Of a DNA stretch of 64,000 nucleotides, positions 50,301 through 52,810 are shown in pieces. Numbering within the stretch: the stretch's first letter is position 1; the number at the start of each line of letters is the position of its first letter. A program made the translations under genes and the position numbers. The stretch is from Octopus sinensis. Taxonomy: Eukaryota. Where the stretch lies: the NCBI RefSeq assembly GCF_006345805.1, contig NC_043000.1:139252001-139316000 (forward strand), in the 5' to 3' direction. The notes below the pieces were generated by a model, which was not told the DNA's origin, did not search any database, and saw nothing but the letters and a program-made list of their open reading frames with translations.

Positions 50301-50483
50301 GAGGGAACCTGTGGAAGAGGTAGACCCAGGAAAACCTGGGATGAGGTGGTGAAGCACGACCTTCGAACTTTAGGTCTCACTAAGGAAATGTCTAGAGACC
50401 GAGACCTATGGAAGTATGCTGTGCGTGAGAAGACCCGGCAAGACTGGTCAGGCCATGGCCCATGGCCCCTACCTGGGACATAG
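47343..50483 (+). pseudogene. RTE polyprotein (APE endonuclease, RT with internal PHD finger), six 1-bp deletions as assembled
   Basis: TLNVGTL, CIQEVRW, GDFNGHVG, QIDYIL, YRGIKL, QFGF, HQGSVLSP, YADD, FRYLG, LHGSETW, RRLRWYGHV, GRGRPRKTW. Adding six bases gives 3147 nt = 1048 aa + stop. Confidence 0.92.
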
Positions 50484-52810
50484 TCAGTCCTCCTGTGCAT
50501 ACCTTCCTTCTTGTGACACTTCCTTCTTGTGACACTTATGAAGACCTGTTGAGGCAAGTGAAAATCAAATCAGGACAAATCAAAATAGATGAACATCAGT
50601 GGAATTGTATTCTTTGTGGTACCAGTGCCGGTGGCACACAAGAAAACCACCCAAACGTGGCCGTAGCCAGTACCGCATCGACTGGCCTCCGTGCTGTGGG
50701 CACAACAAACACCATCCGATCGTGGCCGTTCGCCAGCCTCATCTGGCACCTGTGTCGGTGGCACATAAAGACACCATCCGAAGACCCGGCGACGTAGTCA
50801 GTCCACCTGTGCATACCTTCCCTTTATGACACTTGTGAAGACCTGTTGAGGCAAGTGTGTGACACTTGTGAAGACCTGTTGAGGCAGAGGCAAGTGTGTG
50901 ACACTGGTGGAGACCTGTTGAGGCAAGTGTGTGACACTGGTGGAGACCTGTTGAGGCAAGTGTGTGACACTTGTGAAGACCTGTTGAGGCAAGTGAAAAT
51001 CAAAATCAAACCAAATCAAAATAGATGAACATCAATGGAATTTGTGTCTTTGTGGTTCCAGTACCGGTGGCACACAAGAAAACCATCCGAACGTGGCCGT
51101 AGCCAGTACCGCATCGACTGGCCTCCGTGCTGTGGGCACAACACACACCATCCGATCATGGCCGTTCGCCAGCCTCGTCTGGCGCCTGTGTCGGTGGCAC
51201 ATAAAGACACCATCCGAAGACCCGGCGATGTAGTCGTCCACCTGTGCATACCTTCCCTCTTATGACACTTGTGAAGACCTGTTGAGGCAAGTGTGTGACA
51301 CTTGTGAAGACCTGTTGAGGCAGAGGCAAGTGTGTGACACTTGTGGAGACCTGTTGAGGCAAGTGGTGACACTTGTGAAGACCTGTTGAGGCAAGTGAAA
51401 ATCAAATCAATCCAAATCAAAATAGATGAACATCAATGGAATTTGTATCTTTGTGGTTCCAGTACCGGTGGCACACAAGAAAACCATCCGAACGTGGCCG
51501 TAGCCAGTACCGCATCGACTGGCCTCCGTGCTGTGGGCACAACAAACACCATCTGATCGTGGCCGTTCGCCAGCCTCATCTGGCACCTGTGTCGGTGGCA
51601 CATAAAAACACCATCCGAAGACCCGGCGACGTAGTCAGTCCACCTATGCATACTTACCTACTTATGACACTTGTGAAGACCTGTTGAGGCAAGTGTGTGA
51701 CACCTACTTATGACACTTGTGAAGACCTGTTGAGGCAAGTGTGTGACAATTGTGTAGACCTGTTGAGGCAAGTGAAAATCAAATCAAACCAAATCAAACC
51801 AAATCAAAATAGATGAACATCAATGGAATTTGTATCTTTGTGGTACCAGTACCGTTGGCACACAAGATAACCATCCGAACGTGGCCGTAGCCAGTACCGC
51901 ATCGACTGGCCTATGTGACGTGGGCACATAACAAACACCATCCGATCGTGGCCGTTCGCCAGCCTCATCTGGCACCTGTGTCGGTGGCACATAAAAACAC
52001 CAACCGAAGACCCGGCAAGACTAGTCAGGCCATAACCGTGGCCCCTACTTGGGACGTAGTCAGTCCCCTGTGCATACCTTCCTTCCTTCCTGTGACACTT
52101 GTGAAGACCTGTGAAGACCTGTTGAGGCAAGTGAAAATCAAATCAAATCAAATCAAAATGGATGAACATCAATGGAATTTGTATCTTTGTGGTACCAGTG
52201 CCGGTGGCACACAAGAAAACCATCCGAACGTGGCCGTAGCCAGTACCGCATCGACTGGCCTCCGTGCTGTGGGCACGTAACAAACACCATCCGATCGTGG
52301 CCGTTCGCCAGCCTCATCTGGCACCTGTGTCGGTGGCACATAAAAACACCATCCGAAGACCCGGCAAGACTAGTCAGGCCATAACCCGTGGCCCCTACCT
52401 GGGACGTAGTCAGTCCACCTGTGCATACCTTCCTTCTTGTGACACTTGTGAAGACCTGTTGAGGCAAGTGAAAATCAAATCAAAACAAATCAAAATAGAT
52501 GAACATCAATGGAATTTGTATCTTTGTGGTACCAGTGCCGGTGGCACACAAGAAAATCATCCGAACGTGGCCGTAGCCAGTACCGCATAGACTGGCCTCC
52601 GTGCTTTGGGGACGTAACAAACACCATCCGATCGTGGCCGTCCGCCAGCCTCATCTGGCACCTGTGTCGGTGGCACATAAAAACACCATCCGAGCGTGGC
52701 CGTCTGCCAGCCTCGTCTGGCACCTGTGTCGGTGGCACATAAAAACACCATCCGAGCGTGGCCGTTCGCCAGCCTCGTCTGGCACCTGTGTCGGTGGCAC
52801 ATAAAATCAC
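50428..52810 (+). repeat. Six-unit (337-435 bp spacing) hierarchical tandem array forming the RTE 3' UTR
   Basis: Marker gtgaaaatc at 50558, 50993, 51395, 51772, 52131, 52468; nested 33-bp and ~62-bp subrepeats. Confidence 0.95.

What the first reader, a model, noticed from the sequence alone, without database searches (positions are those of the whole stretch)
50428..52810. 2.4-kb hierarchical hairpin array with a stepwise countdown as a LINE 3' UTR
Seen: six units, each with a block of 33-bp hairpin repeats, an (AAATC)n linker and three GTGYC..GGCAC hairpins. The 33-bp copy number runs 1,5,4,3,1(+10-nt partial),1 and unit spacing shrinks 435, 402, 377, 359, 337. Each junction jumps from ...ccatccga back to gaagacccggc, the last codons of the ORF. 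Three junctions lack ~40 nt and two keep it. The final module is triplicated (52620-52810). Sister copies have short versions of the same parts. Inference: iterative RT slippage or template re-entry builds an expandable structured UTR, a candidate regulatory system or a LINE-born satellite.
Basis: partly seen in the sequence, partly recalled or inferred. Interest (0 to 1): 0.75.

Follow-up and report, generated by a model that had tools for sequence, protein, structure and literature searches.

The report
Tandemly amplified octopus LINE 3' UTR
A dead copy of an octopus jumping gene (a LINE) has had a ~350-base piece of its tail region copied head-to-tail six times; this is a real but ordinary way for mobile elements to grow internal repeat arrays, and nothing shows it is a regulatory device.

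Summary
Window 50429-52811 carries six head-to-tail units of 337-436 nt. Each runs from the last five codons plus stop of a LINE ORF through a 33-nt repeat block, an (AAATC)n linker and 2.5 modules of ~62 nt. All five junctions are the same, CCATCCGA|AGACCCGGC.

The host is a frameshifted, full-length APE+RT LINE of an octopod (about 47268-52982). Its closest relatives, L004 and O. vulgaris L001, carry the same parts once, so one unit is canonical. The terminal 62-nt triplication is shared with L004 and is therefore inherited.

Units share nested derived changes, which rules out a single-pass RT "re-entry" or rolling circle and requires several rounds of duplication. The 5,4,3 "countdown" comes from two unrelated late perfect duplications; the earlier state was 1,4,4,2,1,1. 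The hairpins fold no better than shuffled sequence, and only the GTGYC..GRCAC stem shows modest covariation. The likely RT-recognition stem-loop lies in the tail, not in the array.

My best reading is a retrotransposon-internal VNTR, founded by one 2-nt microhomology junction and enlarged by homology-driven misalignment, probably at the DNA level. Growth in an RNA-borne master lineage stays open. No free arrays or other multi-unit copies were found, but the source genome could not be searched.

The parts
47268..50483 (+). LINE ORF (APE endonuclease, reverse transcriptase, PHD-like Cys-rich motif). It is broken into six overlapping open stretches by at least 5 frameshifts, with no in-frame stop. 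The family stop codon (TAG in L004 and in units 5 and 6) reads TGG at 50445-50447, so the ORF runs on to TAG at 50481-50483.
50429..50779 (+). Unit 1 (351 nt): full ORF-end segment A, a perfect 16-nt duplication (50503-50537), one 33-nt repeat B, (AAATC)n linker C, half-module H1, and modules D and E
50780..51215 (+). Unit 2 (436 nt): segment A lacking 38 nt, five B copies (50827-50995; the 3rd and 4th are identical; the 2nd carries a GCAGAG insert), then C, H1, D, E
51216..51616 (+). Unit 3 (401 nt): segment A lacking 38 nt, four B copies (51263-51397; same GCAGAG insert as unit 2), then C, H1, D, E
51617..52005 (+). Unit 4 (389 nt): segment A lacking 38 nt, three B copies of which two come from a perfect 46-nt duplication (51656-51748), a linker with an extra 10 nt, then H1, D, E
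52006..52354 (+). Unit 5 (349 nt): full segment A with TAG stop, one B plus a 10-nt duplication, then C, H1, D, E
52355..52695 (+). Unit 6: full segment A, one B, then C, H1, D, E. It is closest to the single-unit relative L004 (94.7%) and keeps the ancestral GTCCGCC state in E.
52696..52811 (+). Second and third copies of the 62-nt module E. The E x3 arrangement is shared with L004, so it is inherited and not private to this copy.
52811..52956 (+). Conserved LINE 3' tail, the part shared by all 5'-truncated copies. It ends in a two-tier stem-loop CGUCC..CCAUG-CUAG-CAUGG..GGACG.
52957..52982 (+). (ATG)n terminal microsatellite of the LINE
26870..28364 (-). Sister copy (88.6% identical over 1 kb of ORF) with a single-unit UTR. 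It carries its own, independent ~105-nt tandem duplication of B-linker-H1.
29392..29909 (-). 5'-truncated sister copy: linker, H1 and four to five 62-nt modules arranged as a 129-nt two-module repeat x2.1, then the tail
35099..35558 (-). 5'-truncated sister copy with 4-5 modules and the tail

Best explanation
This is a retrotransposon-internal VNTR. A ~350-nt segment of an octopod RTE-like LINE has been amplified to six head-to-tail units inside one full-length, now frameshifted copy. The segment runs from the last 5 codons plus stop through the 33-nt repeat, the (AAATC)n linker and the first 2.5 of the 62-nt modules.

The canonical family UTR is A-B-C-H1-D-E-E-E-tail with one unit (shown).

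The array was founded once, by a join with only 2 nt of microhomology: ...CCGA|GCGTGG joined to ...GAGA|AGACCC. All five junctions are identical (shown). Once two 350-nt units existed, further copies were added over several rounds, with point mutations and a 38-nt slippage deletion arising between rounds. Nested and mosaic shared variants show this.

I infer that these rounds were homology-driven misalignment of DNA at this locus, by unequal sister-chromatid or allelic exchange or by fork template switching. Smaller slippage events changed the 33-nt, 16-nt, 10-nt and 5-nt repeats, and perfect late duplications show that this continued in situ.

The units have since diverged by about 2% each, mostly through private changes, so the array is no longer being homogenised and is decaying neutrally. 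Its short inverted repeats are inherited family motifs. The element's probable RT-recognition stem-loop lies in the tail, downstream of the array.
For: - One unit is canonical. L004 (92% aa, 94-97% nt) reads A-B-C-H1-D-E-E-E-T, and O. vulgaris L001 reads A-B-C-H1-D-D'-E-T.
- Junctions are identical.
- Growth took several rounds:
  - Units 2-4 share the 38-nt deletion, GTGCC>GTACC and TTG>TTA.
  - Units 2 and 3 share the GCAGAG insert and GGTACC>GGTTCC.
  - Units 1-5 share GTCCGCC>GTTCGCC, while unit 6 and L004 keep C.
  - Units 1-3 share a 2-nt deletion that conflicts with the 2-4 grouping, which makes the pattern mosaic.
- In situ DNA slippage is demonstrated at small scale. The 46-nt x2 duplication is 100% identical, B3 equals B4 in unit 2, and the 16-nt and 10-nt duplications are perfect. 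That is 0 differences over ~105 nt, where mean unit divergence of 5.75% predicts ~6 (my Poisson arithmetic, P about 0.003-0.015).
- Decay: at least 5 frameshifts in the ORF and 1-9 private substitutions per ~250 nt of each unit.
- Structure: no folding excess, and the conserved terminal stem-loop is in the tail.
- Precedent: SVA and LAVA VNTRs are remodelled at the DNA level through microhomologies (PMC4432496). UTR-derived tandem arrays are known from the chicken CR1 HinfI repeat, Ogre, HeT-A and cetacean L1 (PMC9659126).
Against: - The DNA-versus-RNA question is not settled. Private divergence per unit (~2%) is about the same as the upper estimate of this copy's post-insertion decay. That estimate is ~5% at codon positions 1 and 2 between the window and L004, shared between the two copies. 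The array could therefore already have been present when the copy inserted.
- All large-scale copy-number changes predate the private mutations. That also fits growth in an active lineage followed by freezing at insertion.
- Independent tandem duplications occur in about half of the few informative family copies. This frequency hints at a retrotransposition-linked mechanism.
- No target-site duplication was found, so the element's 5' border is not fixed.
- Only about 5 copies that retain both ORF end and modules could be inspected.
Confidence: 0.55

Rival explanations
1. RNA-borne growth. The multi-unit UTR was built up over successive retrotransposition cycles of a master lineage. RT copy-choice or template switching between repeated units of the RNA, or DNA-level changes in successive master loci, added units. 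This copy then inserted with the array already in place and has only decayed since.
For: - UTR duplications are demonstrably heritable in this family: E x3 is shared by the window copy and L004.
- Module number differs between subfamilies, 3-5.
- Unit-private divergence (~2%) is similar to the estimated age of the insertion.
- The structural growth phase is older than the private mutations.
- Independent segmental duplications occur in other copies.
- Template jumping by non-LTR RTs is established biochemistry (R2 RT, Bibillo & Eickbush 2002; my own knowledge).
Against: - None of the other informative copies (window 26870-28364, L001, L004, L002, L005) has an E-to-A junction.
- The perfect small duplications must in any case be post-insertion DNA events.
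- The VNTR precedent in SVA and LAVA is DNA-level (PMC4432496).
Confidence: 0.28
2. During one target-primed reverse transcription the RT repeatedly jumped from GAAGACCCGGC back to ...CCATCCGA, or ran round a ~350-nt circular RNA. This laid down all six units at once, with progressively fewer 33-nt repeats.
For: The junction is identical in all units, and the microhomology is short, as in RT template jumps. The length series is superficially ordered.
Against: - Units copied from one template in one pass cannot share nested derived substitutions and indels in subsets.
- The series 5,4,3 results from two unrelated late perfect duplications. Unit 2 went 4>5 by duplicating a copy that already carried a private T>G. 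Unit 4 went 2>3 by a 46-nt-period duplication.
- No hammerhead or other ribozyme or known RNA family matches the unit.
Confidence: 0.04
3. Assembly artefact: a shorter array was expanded by a long-read assembler.
For: The ORF has 5 frameshifts and no nonsense codon, a pattern that noisy-read indel errors could also give. Tandem arrays are error-prone in assemblies.
Against: Each unit has its own structural signature and 1-9 private substitutions. The signatures are 1, 5, 4 or 3 B copies, the 38-nt deletion in three adjacent units, and distinct small duplications. Spurious expansion would give near-identical units.
Confidence: 0.05
4. Selected function: the multiplied hairpin modules act as a structured regulatory or protein-binding UTR, for example as extra binding sites for the LINE protein, a small-RNA source or an editing substrate.
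For: - The 24-nt core of the 33-nt repeat is identical between subfamilies whose proteins are only ~79% identical.
- The GTGYC-GGT-GRCAC stem shows C-G/U-G/U-A and G-C/A-U states (5 cells changed on both sides, reached by 2 of 500 shuffles).
- Every family copy keeps 3-5 modules.
Against: - That conservation concerns the single-unit family UTR, not the six-fold array.
- The array sits in a frameshifted copy and its units accumulate private changes, including stem-breaking ones such as GGGGAC in unit 6 and GTGAC in unit 4.
- Folding energies equal those of shuffles.
- Modules are paralogues, so the covariation counts are not independent.
Confidence: 0.06
5. Serial nested or tandem insertions of 5'-truncated LINE copies into one another (double-insertion model of satellite birth).
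For: 5'-truncated copies of this family are abundant, with at least 8 tails in 64 kb.
Against: Junctions go from module E straight to the ORF end. They lack the 146-nt tail and the (ATG)n that every insertion carries.
Confidence: 0.01

Closest known systems
VNTR domains of hominoid composite non-LTR retrotransposons (SVA, LAVA)
   Same: An internal tandem-repeat domain of a non-LTR retroelement whose copy number and organisation differ between copies and lineages. Remodelling occurs through short homologies. The arrangements are inherited by daughter copies (PMC4432496).
   Different: SVA repeat units are 30-50 nt and GC-rich, and the elements are non-autonomous. [quoted passage not shown] Only one expanded copy is known.
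Satellite or tandem arrays derived from retrotransposon 3' regions: chicken CR1 HinfI repeat (3' UTR plus part of ORF2), pea Ogre hypervariable 3' UTR and PisTR-A, Drosophila HeT-A 3' UTR and 18HT, cetacean common satellite from the L1 3' end
   Same: A TE 3' UTR, in CR1 together with the end of the ORF, is the repeating unit of a tandem array (review PMC9659126).
   Different: Those are established, free, high-copy satellites. Here the array is six units, still embedded between an ORF and the LINE tail, and no free array has been seen.
Mouse L1 5' UTR monomer arrays (own knowledge)
   Same: A UTR of a LINE built from tandem ~200-nt monomers whose number varies between copies and subfamilies.
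   Different: Those monomers are at the 5' end and carry promoter function, and they are a fixed family trait. Here the array is at the 3' end, the multi-unit state is not the family norm, and no function is shown.
Stringent-type LINE 3' ends (eel UnaL2, CR1, L2 and RTE-like elements with a terminal stem-loop plus microsatellite; own knowledge; concept cited in PMC5135761)
   Same: A conserved stem-loop lies immediately before a short tandem repeat tail, here (ATG)n. All 5'-truncated copies share it.
   Different: That feature is the tail at 52811-52982, not the array. RT binding is untested here.
Octopus RTE-class LINEs (RTE-2_OV, Petrosino et al. 2022, PMC9115989)
   Same: Octopod host, EN-RT-zinc-finger single ORF of ~3.2-3.3 kb, a ~0.6-kb 3' UTR and a microsatellite right after the ORF.
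   Different: Sequence identity could not be tested, because the published element's sequence is not in the paper or its supplements (also noted in PMC13282606). No multi-unit UTR is described there.

Membership tests
APE-type LINE (non-LTR retrotransposon) | AP-endonuclease domain upstream of a reverse transcriptase in one strand-consistent ORF | tested here: met
   Pfam Exo_endo_phos_2 E=4.6e-07 and RVT_1 E=2.9e-15 on consecutive ORF fragments 47618-50483. There are 1997 homologues at E<=1e-20, the best from Octopus bimaculoides (86%) and O. vulgaris (84%).
APE-type LINE (non-LTR retrotransposon) | Many 5'-truncated copies sharing the 3' end | tested here: met
   At least 8 further tails in the 64-kb window and several in L001 and L005.
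APE-type LINE (non-LTR retrotransposon) | Target-site duplication flanking the insertion | tested here: inconclusive
   Only a 9-nt AT-rich match was found, probably chance, and the 5' border is not defined.
RTE clade | Placement of the RT domain within the RTE clade in a phylogeny | not tested
   No reference set of LINE clades is available in these tools. Only the architecture (single ~1050-aa ORF, trinucleotide tail) and the literature description of octopus RTE elements (PMC9115989) point that way.
RTE clade | Very short 3' UTR dominated by short AT-rich repeats (Malik & Eickbush 1998; own knowledge) | tested here: not met
   The canonical UTR of this family is ~0.55-0.6 kb of complex modules, plus (AAATC)n and an (ATG)n tail.
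TE-internal VNTR / TE-derived tandem array | Head-to-tail repeats of an internal TE segment with one recurring junction | tested here: met
   Six units and five identical junctions (one with 1 mismatch).
TE-internal VNTR / TE-derived tandem array | Copy number differs between copies of the same family | tested here: met
   One unit in L004, L001 and window 26870-28364 against six here. Module counts are 3-5, and other copies carry their own duplications.
Satellite DNA born from a TE | Free arrays of the unit outside the parent element, at high copy number | not testable with these tools
   No octopod genome can be searched by DNA here. There is none in the window. The junction search of JGI metagenomes gave only chance hits in GC-rich bacterial contigs. 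The B core is absent from GTDB genomes.
Tandem double-insertion arrays | Junction = complete 3' end (tail plus microsatellite) abutting a 5'-truncated next copy | tested here: not met
   Junctions lack the tail and (ATG)n.
Retrozyme-like ribozyme-bearing tandem repeats giving circular RNAs | A self-cleaving ribozyme motif in each unit | tested here: not met
   Rfam scan at E<=1 of 50300-53100 found only a chance snoRNA hit at E=0.83. The gathering-threshold scan of the whole window found nothing.
Stringent-type LINE 3' recognition element | Conserved stem-loop directly upstream of the terminal repeat, kept by compensatory change | tested here: inconclusive
   A two-tier stem-loop is conserved in 14 tails. 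Two pairs show compensatory changes, but the covariation term is about 0. Binding is not testable.

The most novel reading that the evidence does not exclude
The array is a heritable, RT-generated expansion. In this octopod LINE family, copy-choice or template switching on a repeat-rich, hairpin-bearing 3' UTR would add whole ~350-nt units, ORF end included, from one retrotransposition cycle to the next. That would create a lineage of elements with multi-kilobase modular UTRs, which multiply protein-binding hairpins and can spin off as a new satellite. It would be a directly observable RNA-level route from LINE to satellite.
Probability: 0.2. Interest if true: 0.55.

Novelty: new member of a known kind. 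Interest (0 to 1): 0.27.

Why it matters
If it stands, this is a clean, datable snapshot of the first steps by which a LINE 3' UTR turns into a tandem array: one microhomology junction, then homology-driven amplification, then decay. It lies in a cephalopod genome, where TE-derived repeats make up about two thirds of the DNA (PMC13282606).

It also shows that this LINE family's UTR is a nested set of repeats (5, 33, 62, ~105-129 and ~350 nt) that keeps duplicating. That is useful for repeat annotation, because such copies inflate LINE length and are easily mis-called as satellites. It is also a natural system in which to ask whether retroelement VNTRs grow in DNA or through RNA.

It does not by itself reveal a new mechanism or a regulatory system.

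Tried and rejected
1. I searched the 5.8-billion-protein collection with conceptual ORFs spanning the E-to-A junction, hoping that spurious gene calls would reveal other multi-unit arrays. There were no hits.
2. An exact look-up of the window's 401-aa ORF found it is not on record, so the source assembly and independent assemblies of the locus could not be reached.
3. The junction 19-mer in JGI metagenome contigs gave 16 hits. All are chance matches of 21-44 nt in 44-71% GC contigs, mostly GC-rich and bacterial in appearance.
4. The B-core 24-mer is absent from GTDB genomes.
5. Rfam at permissive and gathering thresholds found no known RNA family, ribozyme or tRNA-like head.
6. Thermodynamic support for a 'hairpin array' was not found.
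7. A TSD search found nothing convincing.
8. I looked for the published RTE-2_OV sequence in the paper's 16 supplementary files; it is absent.
9. The tandem-insertion model and the one-pass RT model were considered and rejected on junction content and nested variants.
10. I considered dating the array against the insertion from codon-position divergence. The result is compatible with both DNA-level and RNA-borne growth, so it is not decisive.
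Full report
**What is there.**

GAAGACCCGGC occurs at 50429, 50780, 51216, 51617, 52006 and 52355. It marks six head-to-tail units of 351, 436, 401, 389, 349 and 337 nt.

Each unit consists of these parts, in order:
- B: a 33-nt repeat, TGACACTTGTGAAGACCTGTTGAGGCAAGTGTG.
- C: an (AAATC)n linker plus about 45 nt.
- H1: a half-module with GTGCCGGTGGCAC.
- D and E: two ~62-67-nt modules. Each contains GCCAG-loop-CTGGC and GTGYC-GGT-GGCAC.

After unit 6 come two more E modules (52696-52811). 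These are followed by a 146-nt tail and (ATG)n (52957-82).

The statistics leave no room for chance:
- The junction 19-mer CACCATCCGAAGACCCGGC is found 5 times against 0.01 expected.
- The 24-nt core of B is found 15 times in the array.
- B copy numbers are 1, 5, 4, 3, 1 (+10 nt) and 1.
- Units 2-4 lack 38 nt of A.

The true linker-to-linker values are 436, 401, 387, 349 and 337.

**The host element.**

The array is the 3' UTR of a LINE on the + strand. The ORF fragments carry Exo_endo_phos_2, RVT_1 and a PHD-like Cys motif. The best protein matches are from Octopus bimaculoides (86%) and O. vulgaris (84%). Thousands of relatives occur in other marine invertebrates.

The ORF from 47268 to 50483 is split into six overlapping open stretches, which means at least five frameshifts. 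This copy is therefore dead, unless the indels are assembly errors.

No convincing target-site duplication was found.

The architecture is a single ~1050-aa APE-RT-zinc-finger ORF with a trinucleotide tail. It resembles the octopus RTE-class element described by Petrosino et al. (PMC9115989).

**What the family normally looks like.**

Through the protein collection I recovered related loci.

- L004 is a 1.6-kb ENA contig. Its protein is 92% identical, its ORF 93.6% identical in nucleotides and its tail 97%. Its UTR reads A-B-C-H1-D-E-E-E-tail, that is, one unit with the same E triplication.
- O. vulgaris L001 (85% nt) reads A-B-C-H1-D-D'-E-tail.
- The in-window sister at 26870-28364 also has one unit.

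The single unit is therefore canonical, and the 'final triplication' is inherited rather than part of this copy's private expansion. The window copy is (A-B-C-H1-D-E)x5 inserted in front of the canonical UTR.

L004 and units 5 and 6 have TAG where unit 1 has TGG (50445-47). The family ORF therefore ends ...REKTRQD*, and the repeating unit includes only its last five codons plus the stop.

All family copies inspected carry 3-5 tandem 62-nt modules before the tail.

Other copies have their own independent duplications:
- A ~105-nt B-linker-H1 duplication in the sister copy.
- A 129-nt two-module repeat at 29556-29833.

This UTR is thus a nested, duplication-prone set of repeats.

**How the array grew.**

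The founding join links ...CCATCCGA, which in the canonical UTR is followed by GCGTGGCC, to AGACCCGGC, which in the ORF is preceded by GCGTGAGA. Only GA is shared. All five junctions are the same, so the join was made once.

The units then tell a multi-step story:
- Units 2-4 share the 38-nt deletion and two to three substitutions. The deletion lies between the direct repeats GAC-N-TAGTCAG.
- Units 2 and 3 also share a GCAGAG insertion in their second B and a GGTACC>GGTTCC change.
- Units 1-5 share a C>T in E that unit 6 and L004 lack.
- Units 1-3 share a 2-nt deletion that cuts across the 2-4 grouping. This mosaic is the pattern left by exchanges within units.

Copies made from one RNA template in one pass cannot share nested derived states. 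The one-pass 're-entry' and rolling-circle models are therefore rejected.

The rest of the variation is private to single units: 8, 3, 1, 9, 5 and 4 substitutions per ~250 nt. Pairwise identity is 91-97%, with a mean of 94.25%. The array stopped being homogenised long ago.

**The 'countdown'.**

- Unit 2's third and fourth B copies are identical and carry a private T>G. Unit 3 has one copy at that place, without that change. Unit 2 therefore went from 4 to 5 copies late.
- Unit 4's first two B copies belong to a perfect 46-nt-period duplication that includes 9 nt of leader (TRF 51656-51748, 100% matches). Unit 4 therefore went from 2 to 3 copies late and by a different event.

The earlier state was 1, 4, 4, 2, 1, 1, so the series 5, 4, 3 is coincidental. 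Measured from the unit start, the lengths (351, 436, ...) are not monotonic either.

These perfect small duplications cover 46, 33, 16 and 10 nt. They show 0 differences where about 4-6 would be expected at unit-level divergence (my arithmetic). They are therefore younger than the units, and DNA slippage has acted at this locus.

**DNA or RNA?**

This remains the open point.

For DNA-level growth:
- Slippage in situ is demonstrated at small scale.
- 350-nt units give ample homology for unequal exchange.
- There is a direct precedent in SVA and LAVA, whose VNTRs are remodelled at the DNA level through microhomologies (PMC4432496).
- None of the roughly five other informative copies carries the junction.

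For RNA-borne growth in a master lineage:
- UTR duplications are inherited in this family, as E x3 shows.
- Several copies have independent duplications.
- Private unit divergence is about 2%, similar to the likely post-insertion age of the copy. Window-versus-L004 mismatches by codon position are 14, 12 and 23. At most ~5% neutral decay is therefore shared between the two copies. The array may already have been complete at insertion.

I put DNA-level growth at about 0.55 and RNA-borne growth at about 0.28.

**Structure and function.**

- A whole unit folds no better than shuffles (z = +0.29; reverse strand +1.6).
- The individual elements also show no excess: B z = -1.7, H1 -0.26, D +0.87, E -0.30, tail -0.67.
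- Across 26 modules from different copies and species, the GCCAG..CTGGC stem is simply invariant, with a loop of variable length.
- The GTGYC-GGT-GRCAC stem shows C-G/U-G/U-A and G-C/A-U states. Five cells changed on both sides, a value reached by 2 of 500 shuffles. This is modest evidence, and the paralogues are not independent.
- The tail ends in a conserved two-tier stem-loop, CGUCC..CCAUG-CUAG-CAUGG..GGACG. It sits directly before the (ATG)n, with a few compensatory changes. That is the usual position of the RT-recognition element in stringent-type LINEs (concept cited in PMC5135761).

The family UTR may well contain functional RNA motifs. Nothing suggests, however, that multiplying them six-fold in a frameshifted copy is a regulatory device. 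Some unit copies already carry stem-breaking changes.

No Rfam family, and in particular no ribozyme, matches the region. A retrozyme-like circular RNA reading therefore has no support.

**Other rivals.**

- Tandem insertion of truncated copies is excluded, because the junctions lack the tail and (ATG)n.
- Assembly expansion is unlikely, because every unit has its own structural and point signature. Only spanning reads can settle it.

**Comparison and novelty.**

The closest known things are:
- Retrotransposon VNTRs of SVA and LAVA (PMC4432496).
- Tandem arrays or satellites derived from TE 3' regions (PMC9659126). These include the chicken CR1 HinfI repeat, whose unit also includes part of ORF2. 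Others are Ogre 3' UTR repeats, HeT-A-derived 18HT and the cetacean satellite from the L1 3' end.
- Mouse L1 5' monomers (own knowledge).

This case is a new example of that kind in a cephalopod LINE. It is notable for its tidy hierarchy and for preserving the founding junction. It is not a new kind of system.

**Limits.**

The source genome could not be searched by DNA. The survey of family members rests on about 15 copies, of which five are informative for the junction. Attempts to widen it failed.

Noticed in passing
window 13504-13784 (- strand): A short family copy in which a 71-nt piece of the ORF is fused directly to the last half-module plus tail. The ORF piece is the start of the PHD-like motif, equivalent to 49642-49712. 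About 1 kb of canonical sequence is skipped. This is either an internal deletion or a template jump during reverse transcription.
   Followed up: partly
L005 14635-15923 (Octopus vulgaris OX597824.1): A 184-nt unit repeated 7.0 times at 93% identity. The unit contains a tRNA-like box (GTTCTGAGTTCAAATTCCGCC) and looks like a SINE arranged in tandem. It is another TE-derived tandem array in an octopus genome.
   Followed up: no
window 17048-18453: A CA-rich minisatellite with a 65-69-nt period and 12-17 copies, with a 134-nt higher-order period. It is unrelated to the LINE.
   Followed up: no
window 50834-50857 and equivalents; L005 8386-8409; L001 7348-7371: The 24-nt core of the 33-nt repeat (TGTGAAGACCTGTTGAGGCAAGTG) is identical in subfamilies whose proteins are only ~79-85% identical, while the flanking UTR has diverged. 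The 'loop' is as conserved as the 'stem', which suggests a sequence-specific site rather than a plain hairpin.
   Followed up: partly
window 47268-50483: The LINE ORF has five frameshifts but no in-frame stop codon. That is an odd ratio for neutral decay and might indicate indel errors in the assembly.
   Followed up: no
window 6123-6270 and 14161-14395: Two further well-preserved minisatellites: 49 nt x3.0 at 96% and 70 nt x3.4 at 95%.
   Followed up: no
L002, L003, L004 (ENA 'metagenome' assemblies ERZ23499376, ERZ23499511, ERZ22665968): Contigs labelled as metagenomic carry cephalopod-type LINE copies, 72-94% nt identity to the window. They are presumably host DNA in host-associated samples.
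   Followed up: no
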